Below, one piece after another: positions 874 through 39,502 of a DNA stretch of 64,000 nucleotides. Both the position numbers and the translations under genes were made by a program. How positions within the stretch are numbered: position 1 is the first letter of the stretch; every line of letters starts with the position of its first letter. The notes beneath the pieces were generated by a model. It saw nothing but the letters and a program-made list of their open reading frames with translations, was not told the origin of the DNA and made no database searches. Origin of the DNA: Botryllus schlosseri. Its lineage: Eukaryota. The stretch spans positions 24,986,001-25,050,000 of the forward strand of contig CM119381.1 of NCBI GenBank assembly GCA_051294905.1. Direction: 5' to 3'.

Positions 874-995
874 TATAACAAACGTTGGCGTATGGCGAGA
901 GTCTATCAAGCGCTATCAGCGGTATAACTATAGCCGCTTTAACAAAAGCAATATCAGTGGAATTGGTAATAGAATCAACTCTCCCTGGTACGCAC

Positions 996-1102
996 CGTCA
1001 CAAAATTCGGACAGTCTGATCCTTGTCCTGTTATCGAAACAGGTAAAGAATTCGTCACTGTCCGCACAATATCGTTCATCTGACGCATCGGAGCAATCGA
1101 TC
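996..1102 (-). CDS. Gene A exon (IDCSDASDERYCADSDEFFTCFDNRTRIRLSEFCD)
   Basis: ttggtag|G...GACG|gtgcgt; 107 nt, same length and phase as gene B exon 29871-29977. The ORF track shows a different frame here. Confidence 0.85.
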
Positions 1103-10100: not shown

Positions 10101-12806
10101 GGAAGCCGATTACGTTCAACATTTTTGCGAACCGCAGAATAAGACAACCGACCCCCACGTTTGGAACCACTAACTTTAAATAAAGCATTTAAACGACCTT
10201 AGCCATCTCTAGGAATATACTGTTCTCCTATAATTGCGATTAAAATTAGGCTTATTATTTCAGTAAATGATGGTTATTTATATTAAATTGCAGTTTTTGT
10301 GAGGGTGATAGTCCCCGTATTAAAAACAATAAACGTTATAGTAAATCGCGCGCAGCGCGAAGAAAAATATCAAGTAGCATATATATTCCCAAAAATAATT
10401 ATGTTATTATGTTGATTTACGGAAACATTATGAGAATATGACAAGCCTTAAAAATTCCGGACATTTGGGCATATTTTAAAAATTAGTGAAATTCCGGACG
10501 TATGGCAACCCTAGCCTACGGACAATTACCACCCGATATTATCGACGTATATCGATATGGGATGGTTGGAACCCTCAAGGTTGTCGATTCAACAGCAGTA
10601 GTACAGATATTTCGTCAAAGGAGTTATATTTACCCTATATTTTCAATTGTCAATATCAATCCACCATGACGTCACAAATGAATATTCGTGACGTCTTGGC
10701 TATAAAAAAAATTTAAAACAAACATGTTTTAAACAAGGGCCTTGTTTGAAACATGTTTGTTTTAAATTGATTTTTGTTTTCAATGCAACCCTAGTCGCTT
10801 AACTACACGTAGTCTCCGTAGCTTTCACATATAACGTGTCCGAAACGAGTTGTAGACAAAGCTGTTTTGTACAACACTTGTACACTTGTGATGCATAGGC
10901 CTACGCCCTAAGGATACCATTAACTCTCTGATACACCACCATACAGTTTACAAACTTTTAGATCAATCAAAAATTCGATGTGTTATTTCTCAAATTGATG
11001 GACAAGTATTCAACTTCTTGGAATTTGGAATTGAGATGTAAATTCTAATATATTTGGTCGACCGGTATAGGAAACTTTCCACGGACCGGTGGTTGAGAAC
11101 CACTAGGCCAGTCGTTCCCAACGTGGGTGATATCCCCCCCCCCCGTCCCCGACGGGCGATTTTGAGAAACATGTGGGCGAAAATGTTTGAACTCCTAGTG
11201 AGATATATTTGATTAACACGGTCAAAAAATGCACGTGAAGACGGCTTATTGTGCACATGACGCGAAAAAAAACGTCAACTCAATGGAAAGTAGACGCGGA
11301 AAACGATTTTCCGACCACCTAACACCTTGGCAAAGTGGCCCATTTTAAATAAATTCACCAGCGATCAGAGTTACGCGAATAAATTTCCCAATTATATACT
11401 TTCTTTTTCGGATTCGTGGTTATGGGGGGCGGAAATTCGTGTTGAGAGTGAAAAGGGGGCGATGAGCCGATAAAGGTTGGGAACCATTGCACTACGCTAA
11501 CGGATCAAAACTACGCAGTAACATGACACACCAACCGTAACGTTTTAACACTACTGTAAAACGAAAATCGTTTATTTAACCGATTTCCGCCATAGCGCAG
11601 GATGAAAATGAGATAGAGGTGGCTTTTTGGCACACAAATGTTCTTTCGCATCCATTCCAGTGTGTGAAAACAAGCCAAGTACACCAATTCTTATGAAGAT
11701 ATATACCAGGGGGGAGTGGATTCCGTTTTGTGTACCACCTCAAGATGGCTCAAAGAGGTGTGCACGCAAATAGCCCAGTACCTCCCTAAGGATTCGCGTG
11801 TTTGATTCGTATTCACCATTTGAAATATGTGTGAAAGGAAATTTCGTTACCAGAAAGTGCCGACAGCTCGATTTACACTACTCTATGATGGAAATCTGGT
11901 AGAGGCACTAATTTTCGGCCCACGTTTTCACAACATTACCTCCAATGCAGTCAGTTTCATGATCGCACATATATCTGTGTGGGAGATGACATCTCTTCTC
12001 CTGCTGTAGTTGGTAATTTCTGCAACTTATTCCGAGCCTTGCTTCTTCGTTCGGATCATATTCGAATTCGTCGCTCCTGTCGCTATAAAGATAAACATGC
12101 TTCCAATGTCAGGCTGTAATGTTGAACAGTGTGCTCACGGATCATCAAACTATAGGATGTATATTATATACATTGCAGCGTTGGGGGAGGGATGCATAAT
12201 ATGAACTCCAAATTTATCGCTGACGATATATATTGAAGACGGGTTTAAATTATACTTGTGTAGCAACTACCATAATAGTTGCATCGCTTTTGACATTACT
12301 ATAGAAAACGCGTCTGGCGAGATAGCGTAGTGGTATAATCCACAGTTGCAACACCAATGAATGGATTGCGGGTTCGTGTACGACTGAGGTCGACTCCAGA
12401 ATTCCTACCTAAGTGTTGGAGGTTTATCTAGGCGCCTCCTCGCCATCTCATCCGTGTAAGCGGTGTCATTTAAAAAGCCTAGAAGTGGGCCGTGCAGCTA
12501 CGGAATAAAAATAAAGAAAATTGGTCTGGTGTAAATGACCATAGTAGTCGACAAACACCATGAATACCTCAAAACAAACAAACAGATAGGAACCGCAATG
12601 GGTTTCTCACGTTTATTTAAATAGACTGATCGATATTTGTAAAAAAAATTGATAAAACGCCTGACCGAGCTGATTGTCATATTAGCAACGAACTTACGGA
12701 CAATCTGGCACACCGTTGCAATACGCCTCCCATCTATCGACGCACGTTATTCCGTCGTTGCATTCGAACACTAGTACTTTGGTAGTGTTACACGGCACTA
12801 CTGAAC
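996..12806 (-). CDS. Gene A: multi-exon LDLa-repeat (LDL receptor class A) protein, partial; join of 12806-12698, 12082-11940, 4118-3995, 3142-2973, 2907-2743, 1792-1693, 1102-996
   Basis: All seven exons have AG/GT boundaries and chain in frame (phases 1,2,1,2,1,1,2,1). Spliced peptide has repeated C..CDG..DC.D.SDE motifs (CNGVPDCPDRSDE, CDHETDCIGGLDEC, CDGVSNCDNGVDEC, CDGTIHCADLSDEC, CDYKIDCSDASDE). Exon-for-exon paralogous to gene B. 5' and 3' ends not found. Confidence 0.88.
1693..1792 (-). CDS. Gene A exon (GVDCECPGQIMCNLPETSSDTKVCLPSSYICDY)
   Basis: atttccag|GA...AA|gtaaat; phase 1-2; paralogue of 28646-28742. Confidence 0.85.
2743..2907 (-). CDS. Gene A exon (SFSNSKCFRCLDGSLIIPQKQLCDGTIHCADLSDECLC...CD)
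   Basis: ctcccag| ... G|gtgagc; phase 1-1; preceded by a 65-nt intron; paralogue of 28349-28519. Confidence 0.9.
2973..3142 (-). CDS. Gene A exon (SMPIGFQCPVTQQHESRNCVLPDHHVCDGVSNCDNGVDECFCDF...)
   Basis: gttcag| ... T|gtgagc; 170 nt, identical length to paralogous 27650-27819. Confidence 0.9.
3995..4118 (-). CDS. Gene A exon (GLDECDCGHTFKCLDGSCAVKASFCDSQEHCPDGSDEILYN)
   Basis: tttcttacag| acceptor; donor AG|gttcaa is weak but phase 2 matches the paralogue 26982-27102. Confidence 0.82.
4677..5023 (+). mobile_element. MITE family K (TIR tacggttaccata/tatggtaacccta, GTCCTC subterminal repeats)
   Basis: TIRs seen; flanking direct repeat aatttaatc; reverse-oriented relative at about 17560-17890. 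Confidence 0.75.
5620..8060 (-). mobile_element. Family A element (GAAGTA-rich ends), 3'-truncated, interrupted by 6027-7268
   Basis: Colinear with 30523-31802; the empty site aagtgtagtaatgcctct is seen there. Confidence 0.85.
6027..7268 (-). mobile_element. Internally deleted hAT element retaining transposase remnants
   Basis: TIR tagagcccgaccgat/atcggtcgggctcta, perfect TSD GTAGTAAT, CCGATA subterminal repeats; minus-strand DPLQW/WNRNEERFPILA..VP.T.VPSERL matches the hAT C-terminal dimerisation motif. Confidence 0.9.
8255..9228. mobile_element. hAT-type MITE (TIR caggggtcgccaac/gttggtgacccctg; GCGGGCCG repeats)
   Basis: Perfect TSD TTTTAAAC. Confidence 0.9.
8625..8909. mobile_element. CAGTGGTTCTCAA-type MITE nested in 8255-9228
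   Basis: TIRs cggtggttctcaaac/gtttgggaaccactg; TSD ccgtaagt/ccctaagc (6/8). Confidence 0.8.
9337..10513 (+). mobile_element. Family E element (TIR taaggttaccata/tatggcaacccta; TTCCGGAC repeats)
   Basis: Perfect TSD GCCTACGG; colinear with 61809-62948. Confidence 0.9.
11109..11489. mobile_element. CAGTGGTT-type MITE inserted at the end of another MITE
   Basis: TIRs cagtcgttcccaac/gttgggaaccattg; TSD cactaggc/cactacgc. Confidence 0.8.
11940..12082 (-). CDS. Gene A exon (DRSDEFEYDPNEEARLGISCRNYQLQQEKRCHLPHRYMCDHETDCIG)
   Basis: ctttatag| ... G|gtaatg; phase 2-1; CHLPHRY.CD.E.DCIGG shared with 23912-24057. Confidence 0.88.
12317..12584 (+). mobile_element. tRNA-derived SINE, near full length
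   Basis: A-box-like tagcgtagtgg, B-box-like ggttcgtgta, shared body, (AAAC)n tail. Confidence 0.8.
12698..12806 (-). CDS. Gene A exon (SVVPCNTTKVLVFECNDGITCVDRWEAYCNGVPDCP)
   Basis: ctatttttag| ... CC|gtaagt; phase 1-2; paralogue of 19006-19111. Confidence 0.88.
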
Positions 12807-12977
12807 CTAAAAATAGAAAACACAAGATGAGATGAAGATGAAGGAAAAATTTCTGCGAAATTTCAAATCCGCCTGAGAATATTTATTTTTGGATAATTTC
12901 GGAATCAGGAATCAGGGCCATTTTGTGAGATAAAAATATATTTCGCTTATATTTCGCAACCTAAATACATAGAGTGT

Positions 12978-18425: not shown

Positions 18426-19005
18426 GTAATTGTTTTGTGCTAAGTAATGTACAATGGGTGGTCAACTGATCATATATCTAATTCTCACGCGTAAAATGTT
18501 GATTTGTACTATAATTGGTAGATAGATAAAACAATTTATCAATGTCCAATTGTCCATGTGGCATATACGGCTGCAAACGTGCACCTCAGACATCGATCGA
18601 TTTACTATGAACAAAAATCATGGAACTATGTTTGGAATTACGAATATTCTCACGTGAAACACGATTTGCCTGACTGTAGTTACATTTCAACCATCATTCA
18701 GGATCAATTCAGTCTGGCACGATTTATTTGGAGATTCCAGCATTACATTATAGTCGCCTAGGATTTGTCTGAGGTTTAGCAACTCTAAACGATGTGGACT
18801 ATAGTCGCATTAACGTTCGCGTTGTGTTCTGGACATACAAAGAGTCAAAGTAGGAATATTTTTCGTTTTTTATTAGTGATTGATTGATTGCGGGGCTGTT
18901 GCTCTAAACTTGGTGACTATACATAGACTATATATAGAATACGTGTGGTCCATCTATCCTACCGACTAAGCCAACAAAGATGCTTAAAATGCTTATATCT
19001 TGCAG

Positions 19006-19111
19006 TACTTCCTTGTAACTCGACGGAAAGGTTCCTATTTCATTGCAACGACAACAATACCTGTATAGACAAATTCGGATCATTCTGCAATGGCAATGAT
19101 GCCCTCTGCCC
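19006..19111 (+). CDS. Gene B exon (LPCNSTERFLFHCNDNNTCIDKFGSFCNGNDALCP)
   Basis: tcttgcag| ... CC|gtgagt; phase 1-2. Confidence 0.88.
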
Positions 19112-22100: not shown

Positions 22101-25100
22101 ATAGAATTCTTACAAGAAGCTTTCCCTTCCCATCAATGTCAACCTTGAGTCGGTGCAGCAAAGGAAGCGTTAGACTCGGTTAAAGTCCTTGGACTTATGA
22201 AAGAAAAGGGCGAGATCTCCACTGATATAATGTTGATGGTAGATGAGATGTACTTACAGAAATGTCACTTATTTAAAGGCATTGTTGTATTGATGGTCCA
22301 TGGTCTTCAAAAATGATGAGTTCTCTTTTCATTACACATCCTGCAAGAACAAAACGAATCTATTTTTTGATGATATACATCTTGTAAAGAACATACGAAA
22401 CAATTTGCTCCGACCAAAGACATTTAATTTCCCACCATTCTCATTCAGCATAAATTCTTCAATAATATCATATCCAGGTGAATTCATTGCATGGAGCGAC
22501 CTTCACAAGATCAGAGAATGTGACGATAAGCTGGATGCGAATTTGCGTAAGGCGCCGAAATTGACATATATGCCTCTTTGCATCCGGGTAATAACAAGCA
22601 AAATGTAAATTTAGCTCTCGCTCCATTCCACGAGTCGACTATTGCAGCTTACAAAAGCTACCTGTATCACAGGGAAGATATGGCATCATTCTTGAGCCTA
22701 ATTAATGCTTGGTGGACAATTGTCAATAGCTGTCACAGATATTCACCCAATCCATTGTCTGATTCAGTTGTCTCACATGTTGGTAAAATCAATTTCCTAC
22801 AGGATTTCGCTAATTGGCTGATCAAATCGAACGGATACAACCCTCAAAATTATTGCCTGTCCAAGCAAACATTCAAAGCTCTGATCGGAACCCTGCAGTC
22901 GCAATCGCTGATTATGGCAGACTTGTTAGCAGGGGGTATGAATATGTGATTCCAAGAAAATTCCAAAGTGGCCCCATTGAAAAAAGGTTCTCGCAGTACA
23001 GGGAAATGAGTGGGGGCGGTTTCTGGTCGGTTTAACAGAAGTTACCAACTCTGAATAGATAATACTGCTCCGTTCCATGTTGAAAATTGACATTATCATT
23101 GTGAACATATCTTACAATAACAAGCAGAAGCTAGTTAATGCCTCTGCGAGAAAAGATGCTATGAAGGACTTTAAAAAGCGGCAGTTGAGCTTGCATACTT
23201 CATTGATGCATTTGATTCACTGAATTTGAGGTCGAAGCTTTGTAACCATAAGCTTGGTGTTCGTTTCTGCGATTAGTTACTTATGAAAACGACTTCAATT
23301 TATTCTTCACATGCTGTAATTGATTTTACCATGCATTAAAATACTTATCATTAGCAAGTTCGTTCCTTACCGCTATACAGCCTATTTGTGTGATTAGTGG
23401 ATAAGTGGATATACTGGATAACTGTATCTTGGACGCTGTCAATTGTAACCTTTGGATAGTACTAATTTCGTCTCTTATAGGGCTTTGCTAGACTTATCTT
23501 AAGGGAGGGATCTGGTTGCGAGAAGCGAAATCGTAAGCAATCGCTGATGTCTGTTTTGCGAACGTCGGCCTCCCCGATATTGCAAGTGGAATGCACCATA
23601 TAAGGCCTCTGTCTTGGCCATCATTAGTTGCAAGCACCTCGTCTCAACCTGTAATCGAATTGTGACTACTAATTTGAAACTACTGTCACAACGATTTAAA
23701 ATGACATAGGATACGACGCCCATGACTGGAAGAAATGACCTGTGTATATTTACCCTGCCAATACGAGTCTATCCGTCCTAACGTACTTTTGATCTTGCCG
23801 CTTGTGAGCTATTTCGGAGATTTCACGAAACCCAAACCCATGGGCCGATGAATTAACTTTATAAGCATAATTGTACTGTACAATCTACATCCCGTAAACG
23901 ATCTATTTCAGTGATGGAAGTGATGAATTTAAATACAACGCATCGCTGGAATCAGAACGTGGAATAGAATGCCAAGTGATTCGCAACCCACCATCTAAGA
24001 GATCATGCCACTTACCACACCGATACGTATGCGATAAGGAATTGGATTGTATCGGAGGTATCATATACATCAGTGCTTATCAACGGGTGAACTGTGTATG
24101 GAACGGCAGACAATAGAGTATGGGTATGGGGAAACTATTTAGCTCCGGGCCGCATTCAACATCTTAATCCCTTCGCGGACCGCACTATACAAAATTAGGA
24201 ATATAAACCAGAACACAAAATTGGTATTTGATTATATCGTGAGGATATGGAAATAATGTATATGTTTATGTAAAACAAACCAACCCCTGATTTGATGATA
24301 TCGTACACGCATCAGAAACATTGGTGAGATTTCATAAGCTGGTTAACCCCGATAACCAATTTTCAAAACTAGGTAAGAAAGTCGGTTGTCCTGATTCTTA
24401 GAACAGGATGGAGATTTGAATTTGTGGATCAGTGATCTGTCTATAGATTTGCTGATTCTAATTTTGGTTCAACTTCTGGACACACAATGCTGGCAGCGTC
24501 ATAGACATGTTAACCACTGAAATATATAGCTTTTTATAAATATAAATACTTCTGCATATAAAGAGAACGAATCTACCAAACACACGCGCGAATTGGGATT
24601 TCAAAGTACAGCACTAAAAGCAATGAACTTGTTGGAGTGAAGTGGCCAATGTAAAATACCACTCGTGATCCAAAAGTCATTCCCGTTTTGACTTTCTGTG
24701 ATGTTTAGTAGTTGAAACCTTTTAAAATGCGTGAGCCTTGACGTCGGGCTATTGCGCCAGCAATGAAATAACAATACACTATAGTAAGAATATAACACAT
24801 AATTTTAGCGATGAAATATAACAAGTAAAAGTTCAATCGAGTCGCTGCAGTAATTAGATTTTTAGTACAGATATTATCAATATTTTCAGTACGTTTCTTA
24901 AGCCCTTCGTGGGCCGCAAAACACGGTGTTGCGGGCCATAGTTTTCCCACCCCTGCAGTAGAGTGTAAAGTAGACGCTAATGAGTACATATTCAGTTATG
25001 AATAATCGAATGCAACAATACAGCAGAGGTGGTCAAAGTAGTCAAGAAAGTTACTCAAGTACGAGTAGAAGTACTTCTTTCATAAGCAACCAAAAACTAC

Positions 25101-28100
25101 TTGAAGTAGAAGTAGAATTGACTGACTTTAAGTTTACTCAAGTAAGTAAGTAGTTGTGAAAACGATCGTATTTCGTTCGCAAGGACTGGCAAAAGCTGCA
25201 AATGGAGCTATGAGGATGGTGTAGATAGCTAAATTCATATTGATGCATCCCAGGAGATGTCAATTTATGACAGAATAAGCAGTCATCCACATCATGGGAT
25301 GTAAATGATAGTATTGATATGGAAATGCGATACTAATCCTTTGTTTACTCGAACACCCCGTTTTAGAGAATATCATGGCATGGCGCCCGTCCTCATATTA
25401 TAAGCAGATGTGGTCAAAGAAGCCAAGAAAGCTACTCAAGCAGAAGTAGAAGTAGCGACGAAAAAATCTACTCAATTGCGAGTAGAAGTACTTTTTCCCA
25501 TCTGAAACTACTTGAAGTAGAAGTAGAATTGACTGACTTCAAATCTATTCAAGTAAGTAAGTAGTTTTGAAAACAGTCTTAATTCGTTCGCTTGGGCTGT
25601 CAAAAGATGCAAATTGAGCTATGCTGATAGTACGGAAAGATTGATTCGTATTGATGCATCCCAGGAGGTATCAATTTTCGACAGAATAAGCATTCTTTCG
25701 CATCATGGGATGCAAATTATAGTATTGATATGAAAATGCGATACTAACCCTTTATTTACCAGAAGACCCCGTTTTAGAGAATATCATGGCATGGCGCCCT
25801 ACCCCATGTTACAAGGCCCCAAGTTCAGGCGAAGAGCTATACGGTGAAGTTGGATCGGAGGCGATTAGTATACGTTAATAACAAATATTGTAGATCGTAA
25901 AATTTACATTTGATGTAGCTTTATTTTCGGAAAATAAAGGCATTACTACACTTTCTGTTATGCTTCAGCATGTATGTTCTGCAGACAAAAGAACTGAAAG
26001 TAATTAGAACTAGGAACTGAAGGTGAAATACAAATACCACTTCTAAAAAGCTGAAAATATATTTAATGTCTTTTGTCCATAAAGCTTCAAATGTGATCGG
26101 CTAAAACAGGTGTAACGTTCAAAAATGCAGGATTTTCCGGATTAGCTAGACACGTCATGGGCTGCTAGATTACGATATGATATGTAATTGCTATTTGCGA
26201 AACGGTAGTTTCAAACGTTATAGGGGACCATACTTTCAGTGATGAAATATTTGATATAGGCGACAATGCGGAGAGAACGGAACCACGCAACCTGGTATTT
26301 AAATTATATTCAGCGATACTTCGTTAAAACATATTTGTCACCCCACATGGATTGTGCGCAAAGCGCAACGAAAATTCTGGGTATTACATGACTTTTATGA
26401 AAATAAAATGTTGGTATACTACGTGAAAACAGTCCCGAAATTCCTTAGGCTATCTTTCTTATTGGGGGATTAAACTATTTCTACTTGGAAAACTGAAAAT
26501 AGCGAAGAGTAAGTAAGTAGTTCACAAAATATTTTGAAGTAGAAGTTGCGAAAAAAGAAGATCTACTTGATTAAATACCAGAAGTAGAGGAAAACTAATT
26601 GAGTACTTCGAAAAAGTAGAATTACTTCGTTACTGACCACCTCTGCAATACAGAACACATATGAAATGTTCCAAGAGTCTCGAACCGTTTCCCATAGCGG
26701 TAAAGAATCGGCTTGTACATAATCTTCGAATGAAAGAGATCCGCGAAGATCGGCAACGAGAAACACTGGAAATTTGACTGTCACTAAAATGTTAAGCGCA
26801 GTCTGGATGGGATAGAAGTTATTGTCAAACAGCAACATTACAAGCGTTAATTTGATCAATATGACATGGTGTCTCGAGAGAATGAAGTGATTAATTACGC
26901 TTTGCCTAATCGGCGATAACAATTACAGCACGAAAGACTGTGATTAGATCCTTTACAGCTTATCATATTTTGCTGTGATAGGCACGGATGAATGTAATTG
27001 CTCCCATACATTTCAATGTGATGGACAATGCATAGTGAAAAGCGGATTTTGTGATGGAGCTCCGAATTGCGACGATCGATCGGATGAGAGGCAGTATCAC
27101 AGGTATAAGGAATTATTTTGAACTCGATAGAGCGGAACATCTCGGTCTTGGTGTACGTTCAATTGAATAGCTGAGTGATAACTGGAATTGAATACGAGTT
27201 TCAACTATGTACAATGTACATAGCCAAGTTCAAATGTTTTACGAATATGTCCAGAATCGGTTACGTCAATTGTGTGAAGACATTACCTGTTACAGGAAAG
27301 AAATAACCCTAAAGAAATTCTACTCGGGTGCGCGCAAATGTACTGCATGTCGAAAATACTTTGTCATGGTGACCTGCAAGGCACACGTATATTGGAACGC
27401 GTTTGTGTAGTGGTCACCTAAAAGAATTGCAGTTACCACGAACACCTGATGCGTGTGTTCGGGTTTGCGACACCGTAGTGAGCGCGCAGCGAATAGTGTC
27501 AAAATAGTTCGATAATAGGTGCATGCCTGAGTGAATAATATCCAGTCAAAAGACGCATACTTACAGTATTTTGAGGAATTTCGAAATTCGAAAGTTCGAA
27601 AGTTTCGATTCGAAACTTTCAATTCGAAAGTTGATATCAATTTACACAGAACAAGCGACGCCGGTTTTCAATGTCCGGTTACGAAGTTGCGGGAGACCAA
27701 TGTATGCGTGCTACCCGACCAGTACGTTTGTGACGGTTACCCTGACTGTGATCACGGAATAGATGAGTGCTTTTGTGATTTCACCTCGGGACAATCTCAC
27801 GGTCGATACGACAGAGAATGTGAGTAATCCATTGATTAGAAGGTACGCTTCATTATAATTACGTCAACACATGACCACTTGACCAGACTTCGACAACTAA
27901 TTCTAGTTGTATAATTAGACTAGTTAGAGCAAAATGTCAGTCACTGCATTCTAATCTAATTTGAAAAATGTTTCATTGCTATAATTCTAATTCCATTCTA
28001 TTTTGTGAAATGTTTCTATGGTCTATAGTTTGAATTCCAATTTAATTTCCGTTTTTTCTGAAAATATAACGGCAGAACGGCATAGTGCGAAACGAGTTAA

Positions 28101-31100
28101 GCTTATACTGTATATGGATTTGTCAATCTCGTACTTATGTGAATGAACTCTAATTGGAAACGGACTGAACTTTTCAAGTTTGCGCGAATTCAAAATTCTA
28201 ATCTTATCTGTAAAAGCTAAAAATCGTATAATTGTCCAGCTCTGCACATGACATATCCAATCATGTAACGGCCAGACGCCCAGACCGTACATATAAATGA
28301 CATAGGCCATACATATAAATGATACGCGACGTATGTGCCGCATTTCAGCACGCTCCAACGGCGAATGCTTCCGATGCGAGGATGACTCCCTGATCATACC
28401 GAAGAGACAGCAATGTGACGGCGTGGTGCACTGTACAGACCTCTCGGACGAATGTTCGATAGAATGTGACAAAAAGAAGGATCACGAATTGCCGGGAGTG
28501 TGTAATTCTCGCTGTACAGGTGTACTGATATTAATAACATCCTATCCCACAAAAAGAGCATTTCTTTAATTTTATCGTGTACAAATACATTTCCCTAAGA
28601 TGAATTTGATTGAAACAGGAGTTATAATACTCTTATTTGATATAGGCATCGAGTGTAATTGTACGGGGAACTTGGTTTGCGCCCCGCCCGGTCACAACAC
28701 CAAGGAGAGATGCCTCAAAGAAACGTCAATTTGTGACAGGAGGTAGGAACAGAATTCGGGTACTATAAACCAGTAGGCTAGTCCCCAACGATTTTGGAGT
28801 CACGGATTCCTGTCAGATAATTTTCCAACTTACGATTTACGAATCCCTAAATTTTCAATATAGTGACCAATACCAATATTACTTTCCCAAAACTACGCAT
28901 TCATAAATAGCCTACTATATAGTCCACGTTGAAAACAATATTGCCATGACGAATTTGACAAGAAAATTTTTCAATTGCAAAATGCAGTCCGAGAACACAA
29001 TCCCTTACGAAGTCTGATGGTGGTGTATTTTATATATGCTCCTCATAGCCATCCGATTCGCCTATACGGTGTCTTAACAAAAGCCCGACGGAAATGGGCT
29101 GTGGTATAAGCTCCAGAATCATCAATACGAACAACAGCTCGGCGGACAACAACCATAGATGGCGGAACACCGTGAATATTTTATGAAATAGCAATGATGT
29201 AACATGCAAGCCAATAATATAGAGAAGCCCGTTTGTTCGTTTGTTGGTGACAGTGCATTGTGTATTGGTACATGCAACATGGGGCGAACAAATAGCACTT
29301 AGCGTTACACAGTCGATCCGCAGTATAGAAAAATATCTGAGACTTGAGACCTATATCTGTCCTAACCAGGGTTGTAACCAAGTCGCAAGGTTCCGAGTCA
29401 CAAGTCATTATGTTCACTGTTCAGTTTTCAGTTCAATCTGGTTCAACTCACTTTTTTCAACTCATGTTGAATGATTTAATGACTCGCATTCAAAATATAA
29501 TAATTTTCCTCAGTCGTAACAGTTTCTGATCTTACTTTCCAACTACCAGGATTGATAGACGAAGTAGCAATAATGGGTAACTTTGCTATTCTTCGAAGTT
29601 ACAATGAAGTGTCTGTCTTGGCCGTCCTAGTCTCGAGTCATACGACTTGGTTCGAGTCACGCACAATGACTCGAGTACAAGTCGAGTCAATCCAATAATT
29701 GACTCGAGTCGAGTCGAGTCATTTTACGCATTTGAAAAAATGACTCGAGTCATTACAACCCTGGTCCTAAAGCAATTGCTCACCAACTTTAGGTGGTTTA
29801 TACTTGGCCGATGTAGCAAAATTAGTATATGGTTTTAGCGTATCACTTGCGCATGTACTTTCGGTTTCAGGTTTGATTGCGCAAATGGGTGGGACGAGAA
29901 TTTTTGTCCAAACGAGGAACAGTTCTTCAAGTGCTATGACAAGAAATTAATTATTCAAAAAACACTGCTATGCGACGGTACGCTTCCCCGATATAGGAAT
30001 GTATAGATTAGTTATCTATGTAGAGGCACACGCCCGTTTCTTTCCATCAGGTATTCCCGACTGTGAAGACAGCTCGGACGAACTGAACTGCGGAAGCCTT
30101 ACCGATTTCATTTGCAATACGTACAGAGTGTTCTTCCCGCATATTACCGGTAACTTTATCAGTATTCGTTGAGTGGTATAAGAAATTAGTCTGTGGTTCC
30201 GGAAGTCCTGTCGAATTGAAAAATAGCGTAGTTTCAGGTACAAGCTGTATGTGTACTGTACATTGCTGTGCAGTGCTGATAAATAGTCTAAGAAAAAATA
30301 TAAACATCACTATCTATATATTCCCAATTGTAATATCATATCGTTCTATTTCTCGGATAGCTCTGCACCGGGGTAACGAACCTTTTTGCAACCACGAGCT
30401 ACTTCTTGGGTACTGATTGAAGCGACGGGCTACCATTTACTAATTGTAATTGAGGATATTTGATATCATTATTTCAAGGGTATATATATTATGTGTGTAT
30501 GTAGGCTATTGTCATTTGTAAGCTGAGGTGGTCAGTAACGAAGTACTTCTACTTTTTGGAAGTACTCAAGTAGTTTTCCTCTACTTATGGTACTTACTCA
30601 AATAGATCTGATTTTCGCTACATCTACTTTTACTTCGTAATATTTTGTGAACTACTTACTTACTTTTCGCTATTTTCAGTTTGTCAAGTAGAAGTAGTTT
30701 AATCCCCCAGTAAGAAAGATAGCCTGAGGAATTTCGGGGATGTTTTCACGGAGTACCAACATTTATTATTCATAAAAGTCAAGTAAAGCCCAGAAATTTT
30801 GTTGCGCTTCGCGCACAGTAGTTATCGAGTGACAGATATGTTTTCACGAAAGTATCGGTGAATATAATTGAGGTAGCGGATTGATTGGTTCCGCTCACAC
30901 CGCATTGTCGCCCATATCGAATATTTCATCACAGTACATATGGCCCAACATAACGTTTGAAACTACCGTTTGGCAATCTAGCAATTACCTATCATATCGT
31001 AATCTAACAGCCCATTACGTGTCTTGTTAATCTGGAAACTCCAGCTTTGTTGAACGTTTCACCTGTTGTAGAAGATCAGTTTTGAAGCTTTATGGACAAA

Positions 31101-34100: not shown

Positions 34101-37100
34101 CAATGGGCCGTTTACAACGGTAGGCCTATAAAGTAGGCTACAAGCTGTAAAATGTCGAATGATAAGTTCAACCGACAGCAAAATCTACGATACAAGCGAA
34201 ATGCGGGTTGCAAAAAAATCCGACTCTGTAAACAATTTTGACATTTTTTTTTAACTTGACGCTACAATTGTAACACAATTTTGAACTTTTTTGACATGTA
34301 AAAAAAAATCGCCCTAGTCATCAGTATATGTATCTGGATAGTGTATGCGTATTTAATTTCAAATTTCATTACCCTAATCGTCAGGAGTCTCCAAAGATTA
34401 TCCACTCCGTGCAGTTCAATGTGATGGAATCCCAACGTGCGGAGGACTTGGTGACGAATGTTCAGCTTCACGTTGTGCTGAATCACAGCCAGAATTTTGT
34501 AAATTCCAAACCCGTGAGGGTAAAGGTTTTAGGTAAACTTCTTTTCTTGTAGGTAGATTTTGATAAAACGAACATTCACTATAGCACGAACCAGCAAAGA
34601 CCGAGTTACTGTTTGGTTTGCGATTGGTGGTAATTCGCTGATCCATGTAGGATAATGACCTCGTTTGAGATTCTCCCCTATATACTGGCTCACAACCTTT
34701 TTTCCTACCGTGCACTATGAGGTTCTATGATTTTGTTGCATACCAACAAATTGACGAAAAACTCAACCTTACTCCAATTATATATACGGTTATTAACATG
34801 GGCCGATTAGCAAATAAGTCGGCATCGAAATTTCGAAACAAATGCGACCCACGAGCTAATCACCCTCGATTGCTAATAACACAAAATTAAAAATTTGGTT
34901 GCAATTATTTCTTGTCCAAGAGCTGATCTAGGCGGGGTGCAACTGATTGGAATGATGCAAAAAGTACTTAACTGTGCTTTCGATGCTTATACCGTATGAC
35001 TGTACTAACAATTCTTCCCATACTTCATTTGTAAACGTCTTCAGTCCCACACATCGATTTGAAAATGTTATTTTTGTTTCTCGCAGGTGTAAGAACTCTG
35101 CAACAATATTGATAGGACGCGAAGTTTGCGATGGAGTTCCGACGTGCGACAAATTCCATTCCGAATTATCCGTCGACGAGCTTTTCTGCCCAAACAGGTA
35201 GTGCTAACACTATGTCATTTTATCGTTTACAGATTGGTACAGCGAAAACAACTCATTATTACCTGACACAATATACCCAATCCCCCTCGGTATAATATAC
35301 TTCTTGTATTCACAGATTTTACTGCGCGGATCGAGGTGCCAACCGATTGCCTATTCACATTCCACAGTCCGGCCGTTGTGACTGGATTCAGGTGATATTC
35401 ATATCAGCTCGTACGACAAGATTTTGTTACGAAGAATCTGTATGTGTGCGATAGTCCCAATGCGTGGTCCTAAAACAAAATTGTATTCTTTTTTCTCGTC
35501 ACTTTGGTACTACGAAGGCAATCTCAGTATCACAATGCCAAGCTTGATCACAATGCAAATTTCGAGACTTGTTTAGGGGGTTTCCTGGGCCATGAGCAGT
35601 ATAAAATTCATGTTTTCGTAATCAGTACAGCAGCAGCTTTCCATTGATACCCGTTTTATCGAATTTAGCGCGCGGCAAGCCGGTCAAAAATGGCCGTAAA
35701 GTTGCCTTTGGTCAAAGGGAAAGTATGACATATAACCCAAATGCAGTGAGCCATTCAGTCTCTCTGTGTCCACGCCATAGAGGACACTATGGTCCAACTA
35801 TACACTCGCCGAGGTGTTTTTTTGGTCTCTGTTTACGGTCTTGAACAGAAGTCTTGGTTCTGAGTAGATGTGGTCAAAGTAGTCAAGCAAGCTACTCAAG
35901 TAGAAGTAGAAGTAGCGACGAAAAAATCTGCTCAAGTACGAGTGGAAGTACTTTTCCATAAGCCACCTAAAACCGCCTGAAGTAGAAGTAGAAGTAATTG
36001 ACTTAAATCTACTCAAGTAAGTGCGTAGTTTTGAAAACAGCCTTAATTCGCTCCGCATGGACTGTCAACAGCTGAAAATTGAGCTATGCGGAAGATGCAG
36101 AGAGCTTGATTCGTATTGATGCATCCCAGGAGGTATCAATTTTCGACAGCATAAGCGTTATTTGGCATCATGAGATGCAAATTTTAGTATTGATATGAAA
36201 ATGGGATGCTAACGCCTTGTTTACTAGAAGATCCCGTTTTAGAGAATATCATGGTATGGCGCCCTACCACATATTATAAGGCCCCAAGTTTTGCCGAAGA
36301 GCAACTCGGATACGGTTTCAACACTTTGCGTGACTAGTATACGTTAATAACAGATATTGTGGATCGTAAAATTTATCTTTAGTGTAGCTTTATTTCCGGA
36401 AAATAGAGGCATTACTACACTTGCTTTTGCAACATGGATGTTCTGCAGACAAAGGAACTGGAAGTAATTAGAACTCAATGTATAATACTCGTAATTGAAA
36501 GAGAAATAAAAATACCACTTCTAAAAAGCGGAAAATATATTTCATGTCTTTTGTCCATAACGCTTCAAGGGTGATCTGCTAAAACTGGTGTATCATTCAA
36601 AAAGCAGGATTTTCCAGATTGGCAGGACAGGTCATGGGCTGCTAGATTACGAAATGAAAGGTATTTGCTAATTGCGAAACGGTAGGTTCAAACGTTATTG
36701 TGAGCCATAGTAACTGTGATGAAATATTTGATAAGGTGTGACAATGTGGTGTGAGCGGAACCAAGCAATCCGGTACCTAAATTATATTCACCGATACTGT
36801 CGCGAATACATATTTGTCACTCCATAACTACCGTGCAAGAAGCGCAACGAAATTTCTTGGCTTTTTCGACTTTTATGAATATTAAATGTTGGTACTCCGT
36901 GAAAACATACCCGAAATTCCTCAGGATATCTTTCGTATTGGGGGATTAAACTACTTCTACTTGACAAACTGAAAATAGCGATAAGTAAGTACGTAGATCA
37001 CAAAATATTGCGAAGTAGAAGTAGAGAAAATCAGATCTACTTGAATAAGTACCAGAAGTAGAGGAAAACTACTTGAGTACTTCCGAAAAGTAGAAGTACT

Positions 37101-38325
37101 TCGTTACTGACCACCTCTGATTCTGACTCCTGACAATCACTGCTTCCGATGGAATATTACAAGTTTCACACATAATCTTACTTGAGTATCATCAACGGCT
37201 GTCTTCTCTGCTCAAAGTCTCCCGCACGAGCGAATGTGAAATATTGTCACAAAGTACTAGCCGGATTCTGTCGACATCGATCTCTAATTATTATGTATTC
37301 ATTCAATTCTTTGTCATGACTGCGCCTAGAAAGTGAAACAGTGACGAAATGTGTGCCTGGGGTTTAAGAAAGACGATGACGCGTCACCTAAATATCACAG
37401 ATATCGCGGGAATGGAGTTATATCTTCCGCGAAAATCTTTTAGCAGCAGTTCGTATAGCGGGAGGGAAATGGCTACTGCCAAAATGTTTTTCACACGTCC
37501 AACTTGACTTTGAGGCCACGTCGTATTTAGAGCGCAGTGATAGTGCACTGACAGCCGCGATTGCATTCGGTAGTCGGCATCGGTAAATTGCAAGGGAGGC
37601 TTGCATTTGTTTGTCAAACTAACATTATTTATTCATTACTTCCGCAGGACTGCGCAGACATGAGTGACGAAATGGGTTGTTCAAATGGCACCCATTTCTA
37701 CTGTCGAAGAGGTACGCGCAGGACTTTCATAAAAGCCAACGAGGTGGGAAAATACCGATAGATATGGCATCAAGATTGTTACAACACTCACCATGATAGT
37801 ATGCGCGCCATGTGGCTGAATTAACATGTTCGTGTTTTCTCTTGTTATTTTTGTGGAGGCTGTCAAGTTATTCGAGAAGCTTCTCTCAAACCCAAAAAGT
37901 ACGAGTGTCCGTGAAATGTTTCGTGAGGCAATCTCTACCTCAACCTGTAGCATTGACGCTTCGGCGCGCGAAGCATCTGAAAATGATTTATCAACGATAT
38001 CATTACATTGGTTGCTTATTTTTGGGCGTATAGGTTTGTGACGGCATCAACGATTGCGATTCTGGTCTGGACGAATCTCAAAATTGCAGCACGACCTATA
38101 AATCTGCATGCAAGCGTCTGACACACAGCTTGACAGTTTGGAGTGTAATGTTATTAATTGTCGGTGAGATATAGTTCGATCGTAGCAACTATATAAAATA
38201 GCCAAACTTACCTAGAATCTTGATCAGCGATACCAGAGAGTCGATATCCAACGCCTCAGTACGAGAACCATCCAACCGACCGCATCTTCCAACTTTTCTC
38301 CGCAGGTTTTAGTGACGCTAATTAG
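19006..38325 (+). CDS. Gene B: multi-exon protein with about 11 LDLa-like modules and a C-terminal hydrophobic tail; 5' end unresolved
   Basis: Exons 19006-19111, 23912-24057, 26982-27102, 27650-27819, 28349-28519, 28646-28742, 29871-29977, 30051-30149, 34385-~34519, ~34557-34629, 35087-35197, 35316-35391, 37648-37743, 38034-38163, 38306-38325 chain in frame with AG/GT ends. Modules are reconstituted across junctions (LCP|DGSDE, DCIG|GTDEC, CDR|RFDC, CDWIQ|DCADMSDE, ANE|VCDGINDC). Confidence 0.85.
19194..20661 (+). mobile_element. Family F MITE interrupted by the fold-back element
   Basis: TIRs caggggcggccaacc/ggttggccacgccca; colinear with 58391-59058, which shows the empty site; TSD ctctatac/ttctatac (left copy 4 nt from the TIR). 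Confidence 0.85.
19606..20223. mobile_element. 618-bp almost fully palindromic (fold-back) MITE
   Basis: Arms of about 300 bp from tagggctgttcaaaaataac to gttatttttgaacagcccta, centre about 19905-19925; perfect TSD CTGTGCAT. Confidence 0.93.
21324..23110 (+). pseudogene. Decayed P-element (THAP9-like) transposase with N-terminal THAP zinc finger
   Basis: VNKCCVYGC...W...WEPT..SVICVLHF (C2CH THAP), LMVDEMYLQK, DDIHLVKNIRNNLL, KQNVNLA, FQSGPIEKRFSQYREMSGG are P-superfamily motifs. Probable start codon reads AAG; several frameshifts and deletions. Lies in the gene B intron 19112-23911. Confidence 0.88.
23912..24057 (+). CDS. Gene B exon (DGSDEFKYNASLESERGIECQVIRNPPSKRSCHLPHRYVCDKELDCIG)
   Basis: ctatttcag| ... 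G|gtatca; phase 2-1. Confidence 0.88.
24119..24955. mobile_element. CAGGGGTGGG-type MITE (GGGCCGCA repeats)
   Basis: Ends ...ggggaaactat/atagttttcccacccctg; TSD caatagag/cagtagag. Confidence 0.75.
25024..26645 (+). mobile_element. Family A element with a doubled 5' end (second 5' TIR at 25405)
   Basis: TIR cagaggtggtca/tgaccacctctg; perfect TSD CAATACAG. Confidence 0.92.
26982..27102 (+). CDS. Gene B exon (GTDECNCSHTFQCDGQCIVKSGFCDGAPNCDDRSDERQYH)
   Basis: gtgatag| ... AG|gtataa; phase 1-2. Confidence 0.88.
27650..27819 (+). CDS. Gene B exon (TSDAGFQCPVTKLRETNVCVLPDQYVCDGYPDCDHGIDECFCDF...)
   Basis: tttacacag| ... T|gtgagt; phase 2-1. Confidence 0.9.
28349..28519 (+). CDS. Gene B exon (SRSNGECFRCEDDSLIIPKRQQCDGVVHCTDLSDECSIEC...CT)
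   Basis: catttcag| ... G|gtgtac; phase 1-1. Confidence 0.88.
28646..28742 (+). CDS. Gene B exon (GIECNCTGNLVCAPPGHNTKERCLKETSICDR)
   Basis: ttgatatag| ... AG|gtagga; phase 1-2. Confidence 0.85.
29367..29763. mobile_element. MITE with TIR cagggttgtaa/ttacaaccctg and CGAGT repeats
   Basis: TSD gtcctaac/gtcctaaa. Confidence 0.85.
29871..29977 (+). CDS. Gene B exon (FDCANGWDENFCPNEEQFFKCYDKKLIIQKTLLCD)
   Basis: ggtttcag| ... G|gtacgc; phase 2-1, 107 nt. Confidence 0.88.
30051..30149 (+). CDS. Gene B exon (GIPDCEDSSDELNCGSLTDFICNTYRVFFPHIT)
   Basis: tttccatcag| ... G|gtaact; completes CDG-IPDCEDSSDE; 3' boundary less certain. Confidence 0.8.
30523..31802 (-). mobile_element. Family A element, full length, inverted relative to 25024-26645
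   Basis: Perfect TSD TTTGTAAG. Confidence 0.92.
31905..32895 (+). mobile_element. Family B MITE, second copy
   Basis: Same TIRs and body as 13672-14646; TSD gtaaat(a)c degenerate. Confidence 0.9.
33059..33109 (+). CDS. Candidate optional exon of gene B (DWDNNTQTASVHPPPGR)
   Basis: ctctttatatag| ... A|gtaaat; symmetric phase 1-1, 51 nt, open; no domain support. Confidence 0.3.
33459..34316. mobile_element. hAT-type MITE (TIR tagggcgattttt/aaaaatcgcccta)
   Basis: Perfect TSD GTCATCAG. Confidence 0.88.
34385..34519 (+). CDS. Gene B exon (GVSKDYPLRAVQCDGIPTCGGLGDECSASRCAESQPEF...)
   Basis: aatcgtcag| phase 1; CDGIPTC...DEC motif; three alternative phase-1 donors (34498, 34513, 34519). Confidence 0.7.
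34557..34629 (+). CDS. Probable gene B linker exon (FDKTNIHYSTNQQRPSYCLVCDW)
   Basis: The only open phase 1-2 segment I found bridging to 35087; donor TG|gtaatt; the upstream intron is plausible (58 nt) only with the 34498 donor. Confidence 0.45.
35087..35197 (+). CDS. Gene B exon (CKNSATILIGREVCDGVPTCDKFHSELSVDELFCPN)
   Basis: tttctcgcag| ... AG|gtagtg; phase 2-2. Confidence 0.85.
35316..35391 (+). CDS. Gene B exon (FYCADRGANRLPIHIPQSGRCDWIQ)
   Basis: tattcacag| ... CAG|gtgata; phase 2-0. Confidence 0.82.
35865..37119 (+). mobile_element. Family A element, full length
   Basis: Colinear with the other copies; TSD gttctgag/attctgac. Confidence 0.9.
37648..37743 (+). CDS. Gene B exon (DCADMSDEMGCSNGTHFYCRRGTRRTFIKANE)
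   Basis: acttccgcag| ... GAG|gtggga; phase 0-0. Confidence 0.88.
38034..38163 (+). CDS. Gene B exon (VCDGINDCDSGLDESQNCSTTYKSACKRLTHSLTVWSVMLLIV)
   Basis: cgtatag| ... G|gtgaga; last LDLa module followed by a hydrophobic stretch. Confidence 0.85.
38306..38325 (+). CDS. Candidate terminal coding exon of gene B (GFSDAN*)
   Basis: Strong acceptor ccaacttttctccgcag; phase-1 reading stops after 6 codons (phase 0 would give VLVTLISG*). Confidence 0.5.
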
Positions 38326-38661
38326 TGGCTGAGAGTCGGGCAGAACAAGATCATGGCGCAGCCTCCTTGCACGTTGTGATTCGTCGCCTCGTCGCGAACG
38401 AATCACGGAACTCGGAACACGAAGCTTGTCAAATTGCCTGCAATATGTTCTAAGCCTATACATCGTTTGTAATGGTCCTATTATTCGAATGACAGCATGT
38501 ATTTCCATACGGATGGTAATCGTATAATATAATGTCAAACAACGATCATGATTCATTGTTTGTTTGTCGGCGATTGCGCAATGCGCATTCGTTATCTTTA
38601 AATTGCAAATCACGAAGTTATATAGCTATATTCTTCAATAGCATGTGTTCCTAATAGTGAC

Positions 38662-38903
38662 TTGTTATTGTTATGGTTGTTTGGGGTATCCATGGAGTTT
38701 GTCGACTACGAGGGTCATTTGCGCCAGGCCGGTATTCTATATTTTTTTATTCCGTATTTGCCGACTTGTGGCACGACCAGGCTCTAGGCTTTTTTTTAAG
38801 ACGCCGCTTTCATGGATTAGATGGCGAGGAGGAGCCTAAATAAACCTCCGACACTTTGGTAGGAATTCCGGAGTCGACCTCCGTCGCACTCGAACCCACA
38901 AGC
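38662..38903 (-). mobile_element. SINE copy, reverse orientation
   Basis: Reverse complement of the SINE body including gggttcgagtgc. Confidence 0.8.
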
Positions 38904-38904
38904 C

Positions 38905-39370
38905 TGGGAAAAATCGAGTACCTGAGCGATTCGATTCTGAATCACGTATTATGCTTCGAGTGGAAGATTCGAGTATCACTCATTATGACGTCACAACAGA
39001 AATGATACGTCAAATTTCAAATATGTAGCTTTTATGCCACCACAAAGAATATAGTGAGTGTTATCCATCACAATCCTATTAAAGTTGCTTTGGTATTTTT
39101 TTGACCTTACCGATTTCGTTGCGCTTTGTGACAATGTTTTAGGATGATCACGACCTCGAAGATGTGCTGTTATATCCAGTAAAGTTCGTATTTTGCGGTA
39201 CGGCCAATCAAGATGTCAATGCTTCTATAGTAGAAAATTATATCGAAACTATAATTCTCGTTGATAAATTAACCTTCAGTAGCGAGAAGCGTATCATCTC
39301 AGTACTGGAAAAAATCATCGTCTTTCACTACTCGACTCGAATCATTAAAATTAATACTCGAATCATTGTG
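38905..39370 (+). repeat. CGAGTA/TACTCG-rich MITE relic; related pieces at about 45590-45890 and 46930-47065
   Basis: Shared blocks aaatcgagta..., tatgacgtca..., ccacaaagaatata, atcgaaactataatt. Confidence 0.65.
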
Positions 39371-39502
39371 CGCAGTTCTACGCCACAACCCACTGGTGCT
39401 GCAGCTGTGGATTATACCACTACGCTATCTCGCCCCCCAATGGTAACTTAAAATACATTACCCGGCCTACGGTAGCATAAGAAACATTTCGAACCGCTAG
39501 AT

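What the first reader, a model, noticed from the sequence alone, without database searches (positions are those of the whole stretch)
38034..38325. LDLa array appears to end in a GPI-signal-like tail rather than LRR/7TM or EGF/beta-propeller domains
Seen: the last module is followed directly by STTYKSACKRLTHSLTVWSVMLLIV, and the next strong acceptor gives GFSDAN* (or VLVTLISG* with the alternative donor). I found no LRR, YWTD, EGF, protease or 7TM exons downstream. Established: large LDLa arrays normally occur in LDLR/LRP, GRL101/RXFP-type GPCRs or mosaic proteases; GPI signals are small residues, a spacer and a terminal hydrophobic run. Inference: an LDLa-only, GPI- or tail-anchored surface protein (decoy, co-receptor or recognition molecule). 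Alternative: a truncated 7TM receptor, since the phase-0 frame continues about 65 codons past its TGA. This is the best candidate for an undescribed architecture here.
Basis: partly seen in the sequence, partly recalled or inferred. Interest (0 to 1): 0.7.

Follow-up and report, generated by a model that had tools for sequence, protein, structure and literature searches.

The report
Receptor gene copy lacking its seven-helix half
The "GPI-like tail" is the leftover first half of the first membrane helix of a sea-squirt LDLa-repeat G-protein-coupled receptor: this gene copy keeps and transcribes the whole outer LDLa array but has no seven-helix exons, so it may be an ectodomain-only decoy, though its true 3' end is still unknown.

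Summary
The sequence facts hold. Exon 38034-38163 (+) ends the LDLa array with STTYKSACKRLTHSLTVWSVMLLIV, and no 7TM, LRR or EGF/YWTD exons follow.

The tail is not a new invention. It is homologous, at the same phase-1 splice donor, to the first half of TM1 in ten paralogues from the same genome. All ten continue within 0.06-3.2 kb into relaxin-receptor-like 7TM exons. They belong to the ascidian LDLRR-GPCR family described in Ciona in 2008.

Gene B alone lacks those exons. tblastn and exon HMMs find nothing in 13-19 kb or 38.2-69.8 kb, and the 134 kb examined has no assembly gap.

B is not decayed:
- It has 14 coherent exons and a 522-codon open array, colinear with A and C.
- Its ectodomain is as conserved as theirs (about 50% identity).
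- It is transcribed and correctly spliced.

Only the juxtamembrane/TM1a tail has diverged, at 20% versus 46% identity. This suggests an old loss of the 7TM part and a retained ectodomain function.

The RNA contig stops at the E13 donor. The C-terminus, and therefore GPI anchoring, remains unproven.

Verdict: a 7TM-less paralogue of a known receptor family, of moderate interest. This scan also noted the A/B pair in this window.

The parts
18792..18849 (+). Candidate first coding exon of gene B. It encodes the signal peptide MWTIVALTFALCSGHTKSQ and has a phase-1 donor AAA|gtagga.
   Evidence: Found by a scan for ATG plus a hydrophobic core plus a phase-compatible donor, 157 nt upstream of the next exon. 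No RNA check was made.
19006..19111 (+). Gene B exon E1 (LDLa module 1, first part)
   Evidence: Homologous to gene A ORF 12697-12882. Splice sites and phase are coherent.
23912..24057 (+). Gene B exon E2
   Evidence: 54% identical to A and 46% to C
26982..27093 (+). Gene B exon E3 (LDLa)
   Evidence: Pfam Ldl_recept_a 27.6 bits, E 3.5e-6
27650..27819 (+). Gene B exon E4 (LDLa)
   Evidence: Pfam LDLa E 0.005
28349..28519 (+). Gene B exon E5 (LDLa plus Cys-rich extension)
   Evidence: Pfam LDLa E 0.002
28646..28742 (+). Gene B exon E6
29871..29977 (+). Gene B exon E7
30051..30149 (+). Gene B exon E8
34385..34532 (+). Gene B exon E9. Four tandem GT donors lie at 34513, 34519, 34525 and 34532.
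   Evidence: Transcript contig X1 record 1 covers 34385-34501.
35087..35197 (+). Gene B exon E10
   Evidence: Transcript contig X1 record 2; joint 35197|35316.
35316..35391 (+). Gene B exon E11
   Evidence: Joints 35197|35316 and 35391|37648 in X1 record 2.
37648..37743 (+). Gene B exon E12
   Evidence: Joints in X1 record 2, plus 2 spliced X12 reads across 37743|38034.
38034..38163 (+). Gene B exon E13. It holds the last LDLa half-module, a diverged juxtamembrane stretch and a vestigial TM1a (LTVWSVMLLIV).
   Evidence: Aligns with the E13-type exon of A, C and eight further paralogues. Covered by X1 record 2 up to 38165.
38164..38169 (+). Conserved phase-1 splice donor GTGAGA. In paralogues this position joins to the TM1b/TM2 exon.
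   Evidence: Same position and phase in A (G|gtaagg) and C (G|gtaggt). The RNA contig ends here, at +2.
38306..38324 (+). It is unsupported by RNA.
   Evidence: Acceptor strength. In the four runs the only reads on 38166-38699 are ~4 partly fitting X14 reads with two mismatches in 38300-38499, which I do not attribute to this locus; depth is otherwise zero. The stretch is single copy.
931..12882 (-). Paralogue A, ectodomain exons E1-E7 inside the window. The gene continues left of the window: E8-E13 to -7566, then 7TM exons from -9204 to -16821.

Best explanation
Gene B (+ strand, 18792-38163) is a transcribed paralogue of the ascidian LDLRR-GPCR family that has lost its 7TM part. These are rhodopsin-class, relaxin-receptor-like receptors whose ectodomain is an LDLa array without LRRs.

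B keeps the signal-peptide exon and all 13 ectodomain exons. The 'GPI-like' hydrophobic run is the exon-encoded first half of TM1. In every other family member examined, this half is completed by the next exon (G-LVAIVGN...). B has no such exon nearby.

Inferred origin: an inverted partial duplication. B lies head-to-head with A and is the only + strand member of a local array that is otherwise on the - strand. The duplication copied the 5' part of a receptor gene as far as intron 13.

Inferred function: a secretory-pathway LDLa array that cannot signal. It most likely acts as a soluble or weakly tethered ligand trap or modulator for the still unknown ligands of its receptor paralogues. This would resemble the ectodomain-only splice products of RXFP1 and LGR4.

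My confidence by step:
- TM1a-relic identity: about 0.85.
- Retained function of the ectodomain: about 0.55.
- GPI anchoring: about 0.15-0.2.
For: 1. Homology and exon structure. B is colinear, exon for exon, with A and C. The donor after the hydrophobic run has the same position and phase in A, B and C.
2. A and C go on to exons carrying GN (TM1), LNLAxAD (TM2), GTExSV (TM3), the ECL2/TM5 motif FGYYSAHSVCLP, CWxP (TM6) and NSAxNPFLY (TM7). A profile of the TM5 exon hits only RXFP1 and LGR4 among PDB chains.
3. Eight more paralogues have the same E13-type exon, followed by TM1b/TM2 or TM3 exons within 0.06-3.2 kb.
4. No 7TM remnant was found near B by tblastn or exon HMMs. The positive control, the TM7 exon of C, scored E 7.8e-28. 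The 134 kb examined has no N.
5. B is intact and expressed. It has a 522-codon open frame and canonical splice sites in coherent phases. A spliced 391-nt contig and spliced stranded reads cover it. The genome holds no retrocopy.
6. Constraint. Identity over E2-E12 is 51.5% for B-A and 49.3% for B-C, against 48.6% for A-C. Within E13 the LDLa half is as conserved in B as among the receptors (65% versus 65%). The juxtamembrane/TM1a half is not (20% versus 46%), and the motif FSSDxxLI...LWII, conserved in the family, is lost.
7. The family is published (PMC2396169). Ectodomain-only antagonists of related receptors are published (PMC7196478, PMC4154783).
Against: - The 3' end is not established. 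The RNA contig stops exactly at donor + 2, and no run covers the read-through or the 38306 exon. This hints that E13 is spliced to an exon I could not see. RNA was laid only to 40299, and repeats mask 38.7-39.9 kb.
- No orthologue from another species could be examined. Protein searches found nothing informative.
- Expression is low: depth about 10 in one 2015 run and 2 spliced reads in another.
- Equal divergence of the ectodomain would also fit a recent loss of the 7TM part.
- The inverted-duplication origin and the decoy function are inferences with no direct test.
Confidence: 0.6

Rival explanations
1. Transcribed relic. B is a recently truncated receptor copy that is still spliced and open by inertia but has no function. 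Its product, an ectodomain ending in half a helix, is degraded or irrelevant.
For: No 7TM exons. Low RNA depth. One cysteine that is conserved across the family in E13 (DEC to DES) is lost. No homologue with this tail exists in 1.8 billion representative proteins.
Against: All 14 exons, their phases and their splice sites are intact over 19 kb. The ectodomain is not more diverged than those of bona fide receptors. Within a single exon the LDLa half is conserved while the tail has lost every family motif. That argues for an old loss with continued selection on the array.
Confidence: 0.22
2. Still membrane-anchored by a downstream exon. The E13 donor is used, and an unrecognised non-7TM exon completes a single-pass helix plus a short tail, or adds another C-terminal part. 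The hydrophobic run would then not be the C-terminus. A variant of this reading: the 7TM exons exist elsewhere because of misassembly or a structural polymorphism.
For: The donor GTGAGA is preserved. The RNA contig breaks exactly at donor + 2, as expected at a splice branch. RNA depth is zero on the unique 38166-38660.
Against: No credible helix-completing exon was found. The best hydrophobic candidate, at 46381, lies in a repeat with at least 72 copies. All AG|GT acceptors other than 38306 are weak and give short tails. The TM1a of B has lost the family's conserved LWII and FSSD motifs, which would be unexpected if a 7TM domain were still attached. There are no gaps in the assembly here.
Confidence: 0.18

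Closest known systems
Ascidian LDLRR-GPCRs (Kamesh, Aradhyam & Manoj 2008, PMC2396169): Ciona rhodopsin-class receptors with 1-10 N-terminal LDL-A repeats, no LRRs, and an INSL3/relaxin-receptor-like 7TM
   Same: B has the same LDLa-array ectodomain, exon for exon, as its neighbours A and C, which do have the 7TM domain. It has the same last exon (LDLa half plus juxtamembrane stretch plus TM1a) ending at the same phase-1 donor. It sits in the same genomic cluster.
   Different: B has no 7TM exons at all. Its juxtamembrane/TM1a stretch has lost the family's conserved motifs. It cannot be a G-protein-coupled receptor.
LGR7-truncate / RXFP1 N-terminal splice variants (Scott et al. 2005, 2006, as reviewed in PMC7196478)
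   Same: These are LDLa-only products of a relaxin-receptor-type gene with 1-7 extra residues at the C-terminus. LGR7-truncate inhibits cAMP signalling of the full receptor.
   Different: They are alternative splice products of the receptor gene and carry a single LDLa module. B is a separate gene with about 11 modules and a hydrophobic TM1a remnant.
Lgr4-ED, the secreted ectodomain-only splice variant of LGR4 (PMC4154783)
   Same: It is the ectodomain of an LGR-type receptor made without the 7TM part. It is secreted and acts as a ligand-absorbing antagonist.
   Different: Its ectodomain is made of LRRs rather than LDLa repeats. It is a splice variant, not a paralogous gene.
GRL101 (Lymnaea) and RXFP1/2
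   Same: These combine LDLa modules with a related 7TM family. The TM5-exon profile of the paralogues hits RXFP1 and LGR4 only.
   Different: They carry LRRs between the LDLa module(s) and the 7TM domain. B has neither LRRs nor a 7TM domain.

Membership tests
LDLRR-GPCR (ascidian LDLa-repeat, relaxin-receptor-like class A GPCR) | N-terminal tandem LDL-A repeats | tested here: met
   Pfam Ldl_recept_a on exon ORFs. The spliced 522-aa model has about 11 Cys-rich LDLa-type modules that keep their (S)DE acidic motifs.
LDLRR-GPCR (ascidian LDLa-repeat, relaxin-receptor-like class A GPCR) | No LRR domain between the LDLa array and the membrane | tested here: met
   The last LDLa half-module is followed directly, in the same exon, by the juxtamembrane stretch and TM1a. 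LDLa-type modules account for the whole model.
LDLRR-GPCR (ascidian LDLa-repeat, relaxin-receptor-like class A GPCR) | Relaxin/INSL3-receptor-like 7TM domain | tested here: not met
   B: no 7TM exon by tblastn or exon HMMs in 13-19 kb and 38.2-69.8 kb. A, C and eight other paralogues do have these exons.
GPI-anchored surface protein | N-terminal signal peptide | tested here: inconclusive
   A candidate exon at 18792-18849 encodes MWTIVALTFALCSG.. with a phase-compatible donor. It has no RNA confirmation, and no signal-peptide predictor was available.
GPI-anchored surface protein | C-terminal signal at the very end of the ORF: small omega residues, a 5-10 residue spacer, and a 12-20 residue hydrophobic tail | tested here: inconclusive
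   The pattern S-A-C / KRLTHS / LTVWSVMLLIVG fits on paper. However, the run is a homologue of TM1a, and RNA supports neither GEI* nor GFSDAN* as the real C-terminus. No GPI predictor was available.
GPI-anchored surface protein | Release by PI-PLC / lipid anchor shown | not testable with these tools
   This needs an experiment.
LDLR/LRP family | EGF-precursor region with YWTD beta-propeller, plus a single-pass TM and an NPxY tail | tested here: not met
   None appears in the spliced model. Downstream + strand ORFs of at least 110 aa give no Pfam hit.
Ectodomain-only splice variants of LGR-type receptors (LGR7-truncate, Lgr4-ED) | Produced by alternative splicing of a gene that also encodes the full receptor | tested here: not met
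   B is a separate locus with no 7TM exons to splice to. The resemblance is functional only.

The most novel reading that the evidence does not exclude
B is a selectively maintained, gene-encoded ectodomain-only member of an LGR-type receptor family. It would be a secreted or GPI-tethered array of about 11 LDLa modules, whose former TM1 half-helix has been re-used as a GPI or retention signal. It would act as a dedicated decoy or co-receptor for the unknown ligands of the orphan ascidian LDLRR-GPCRs.
Probability: 0.3. Interest if true: 0.55.

Novelty: new variant of a known kind. Interest (0 to 1): 0.36.

Why it matters
LDLRR-GPCRs are a tunicate-specific expansion of orphan receptors. The only paper using that family name that I could find in the searchable literature is the 2008 description. 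A paralogue that keeps only the ligand-facing array would be a natural decoy. It could serve as a ready-made soluble bait for finding the ligands of the family.

The case also shows how a receptor gene can become a secreted or tethered binding protein by partial duplication, and how half a transmembrane helix can mimic a GPI signal. For annotation the practical lesson is this: an LDLa array ending in a short hydrophobic run at a splice donor in a tunicate genome should be read as the start of TM1, not as a GPI signal, until the next exon is known.

Tried and rejected
- The search of protein representatives with E13. Six hits, all unrelated LDLa proteins. The query is short and had no power for relatives below about 60% identity, so this says nothing about orthologues.
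- The search for homologous proteins with the E12 ORF and the E10 ORF. No candidates. The tool's length window excludes full-length proteins, so a blank is uninformative.
- Pfam on single 7TM exons. The exons are too short to reach significance. I replaced this with motif inspection and a TM5-exon profile against PDB.
- A + strand tblastn hit at 49809-49859 to the region upstream of TM1b. Rejected: it runs into a stop and has no GN motif.
- Candidate helix-completing exon at 46381. Rejected: it lies in a repeat with at least 72 copies.
- X14 reads at 38300-38499. All are only partly aligned (about 50 nt) with two mismatches, and no X14 reads cover E9-E13. I did not accept them as a 3' UTR of B.
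- Orphan 7TM exons between A and B (13-19 kb), as a simple inversion would predict. None were found.
- Downstream ORFs (40520-40933, 44728-45120, 50521-50922, 51508-51909, 55458-55802, 59331-59915). No Pfam family. PDB was searched only with 50521-50922 and 51508-51909, with no meaningful hit.
- dN/dS between paralogues was not attempted, because synonymous sites are saturated at about 50% protein identity.
- Read laying and the look-up of sequencing runs are capped at one call each, so RNA beyond 40299 could not be examined.
Full report
**What is there**

The window is G000:C11:24986001-25050000 of a 495-Mb sea-squirt genome.

Six-frame scans and Pfam show LDLa modules on both strands. They belong to two head-to-head genes:
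- Gene A, on the - strand, runs from 12882 leftwards out of the window.
- Gene B, on the + strand, runs from 18792 to 38163.

I fetched 30 kb to the left and 40 kb to the right of the window. The resulting 134 kb contain no N.

**Gene B model**

Homology to A and splice-site and phase analysis give 13 exons between 19006 and 38163. All have AG/GT borders in coherent phases. Together they form one open frame of 522 codons made of about 11 LDLa-type modules. A candidate signal-peptide exon (MWTIVALTFALCSG...) lies at 18792-18849 with a compatible phase-1 donor.

The last exon, E13 (38034-38163), reads VCDGINDCDSGLDESQNC-STTYKSACKRLTHSLTVWSVMLLIV and ends at TCG|gtgaga.
- Read-through gives GEI*.
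- The strongest downstream acceptor, with the exon starting at 38306, gives GFSDAN*.
- The phase-0 reading gives VLVTLISG*, followed by 64 open codons that are not receptor-like.

**What the tail is**

Gene A has the same exon (VCDGTNDCRSGIDECQNC-NPSPFSSDTNLIKFLFLKSALWMI), ending at a donor in the same position and phase. So does a third paralogue, C, on the - strand of the right flank at 77259-77136.

In both A and C the following exons encode a complete class A 7TM domain:
- TM1b/TM2 (G-LVAIVGN... LVLNLAVAD)
- TM3 (C..LG..AV.GTEVSV)
- TM4
- ECL2/TM5 (FGYYSAHSVCLP...)
- TM6 (CWIP)
- TM7 (LPINSA.NPFLY)

These are shown. A profile of the TM5 exon from six paralogues hits only RXFP1 and LGR4 among all PDB chains, at their ECL2/TM5 (E 0.03; single sequence).

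Eight further paralogues elsewhere in the genome (loci L009-L016) have the same E13-type exon. In each it is followed within 0.06-3.2 kb by TM1b/TM2 or TM3 exons.

This is the LDLRR-GPCR family described in Ciona in 2008: LDL-A repeats, no LRRs, and a relaxin/INSL3-receptor-like 7TM domain (PMC2396169). The hydrophobic run of B is therefore the exon-encoded first half of TM1 (TM1a), not a purpose-built GPI signal.

**B has no 7TM part**

- tblastn with all 7TM exons of A and C finds nothing on the + strand from 38.2 to 104 kb. This holds even at E up to 50 with A's four main exons and at E up to 0.05 with the full A and C set. The only significant hits are C's own exons on the - strand.
- Exon HMMs built from 4-9 paralogues and run without filters find nothing on either strand in 13-19 kb or 38.17-69.8 kb. 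They do recover C's TM7 exon at E 7.8e-28 as a positive control.
- C is itself complete and colinear with B, with E2-E13 at 90164-77136 followed by the 7TM exons. Its 7TM domain is therefore not B's.
- A chance match at 49809 and a hydrophobic candidate exon at 46381, which lies in a repeat with at least 72 copies, were rejected.

**Is B alive?**

RNA evidence comes from one call.
- A 2015 run (X1, Logan contigs) holds a 391-nt contig at depth 9.7. It joins E10, E11, E12 and E13 at exactly the predicted GT..AG borders.
- A second X1 contig covers E9.
- A 2026 stranded RNA run (X12) has two spliced reads across E12|E13 in the orientation expected for a + strand RNA.
- The genome has no second copy of E13; the next best match is 49% identical. 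The joined form is therefore RNA, not a retrocopy.

Conservation evidence:
- Over E2-E12, identity is 51.5% for B-A and 49.3% for B-C, against 48.6% for A-C. B's ectodomain has not evolved faster than those of true receptors.
- Within E13 the LDLa half is as conserved in B as among the ten receptors (65% versus 65%).
- The juxtamembrane/TM1a half is not (20% versus 46%). The motifs found across the ten receptors, (P/A)FS(S/D), LI and W-I-I, are gone in B.

Conservation of the array combined with decay of exactly the part that only matters next to a 7TM bundle argues for an old loss of the 7TM part and continued selection on the ectodomain. This is inference, not proof.

**The 3' end is unresolved**

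The X1 contig ends at 38165, two bases past the donor. The stretch 38166-38660 is single copy. None of the four runs has coverage of it that I can attribute to B. The few X14 reads at 38300-38499 align over only about 50 nt, carry two mismatches, and come without any X14 coverage of E9-E13.

A contig break exactly at the donor hints that the donor is used.

Repeats also mask 38.7-39.9 kb. All other AG|GT acceptors up to gene C are weak and would add only short tails.

**Mechanism, with odds**

- Shown: B is a 7TM-less, spliced, transcribed paralogue whose tail is TM1a.
- Inferred (about 0.55): the product enters the secretory pathway and works as a non-signalling LDLa array. It would act as a ligand trap or modulator for its receptor paralogues. 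This would resemble LGR7-truncate, which inhibits RXFP1 signalling (PMC7196478), and secreted Lgr4-ED, which absorbs LGR4 ligands (PMC4154783).
- GPI anchoring (about 0.15-0.2): the S-A-C / KRLTHS / 12-residue hydrophobic pattern fits on paper, but it needs a C-terminus that the RNA does not show. Twelve to thirteen hydrophobic residues are too few for a transmembrane anchor.
- Origin (inferred): B lies head-to-head with A and is the only + strand member of a local array otherwise on the - strand (A, C, L010, L011, L013). This suggests an inverted partial duplication reaching as far as intron 13. No orphan 7TM exons lie between A and B.

**Rivals**

- A functionless, recently truncated relic (0.22).
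- A protein completed by an unseen downstream exon, or by 7TM exons displaced through misassembly or polymorphism (0.18).

**Novelty**

The family and the idea of ectodomain-only LGR products are both known. A separate, conserved, 7TM-less gene inside the LDLRR-GPCR family is not described in the searchable literature. I rate it a new variant of a known kind, of moderate interest.

**Limits**

- No orthologues could be examined. The protein searches were uninformative.
- No GPI, signal-peptide or TM predictor was available.
- Short peptides were typed only inside scripts.

Noticed in passing
window 21413-22946 (+): Intron 1 of gene B holds open ORFs of 256 aa and 132 aa. The first matches the THAP domain (E 6e-6), with a weaker, sub-threshold match to the P-element transposase HTH domain. 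This looks like a P-element/THAP9-like transposon insertion.
   Followed up: partly
right flank: window coordinates 68122-91362 (-), loci L005-L007: A third, complete paralogue (gene C) lies tail-to-tail with B. It has E2-E13 at 90164-77136 and 7TM exons at 75542-68122, with all class A motifs.
   Followed up: yes
right flank: window coordinates 102518-102646 (-), locus L008: A TM7-like remnant (..LPTSSAANAF..) with three in-frame stops. It is probably the decayed 3' end of a further family member upstream of gene C.
   Followed up: no
window 50521-50922 and 51508-51909 (+): Two single-copy open frames of 134 aa each, one acidic and one leucine-rich. Neither has a Pfam or PDB match. They may be exons of an unrelated gene between B and C. 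If so, the 3' end of B lies before about 50 kb.
   Followed up: partly
window 25146-26310 and 36051-36791 (+); 5643-8121 (-): The same repeat, at 60-100% protein-level identity in several frames, sits in introns of both A and B, twice in B. Further repeats at 38664-39434 and 39700-39900 are highly transcribed on both strands in all the RNA runs.
   Followed up: partly
window 34513-34533 (+): Exon E9 of B ends in four tandem GT donors, three 6 nt apart and the last 7 nt on (gtgagg|gtaaag|gttttag|gtaaac). The two X1 transcript contigs leave a 55-nt gap exactly across this junction, which suggests alternative donor use or a heterozygous site.
   Followed up: no
window 38076-38110 (+): In E13, B has DESQNC where all ten receptor paralogues have DEC-x(1-3)-C. 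B carries a new cysteine eight residues further on (KSAC). This may reflect a rearranged disulfide after loss of the 7TM part.
   Followed up: no
G000 C1:14.30-14.46 Mb, C8:6.40-6.53 Mb, C9:17.73-17.79 Mb, C4:22.23-22.39 Mb: Clusters of 7tm_1 matches that start at model position about 51-60, inside open frames of 340-530 aa. TM1 appears to lie on a separate exon. These may be the 'unclassified LGR-like' relatives of the 2008 paper, or other tunicate-specific receptor families.
   Followed up: no
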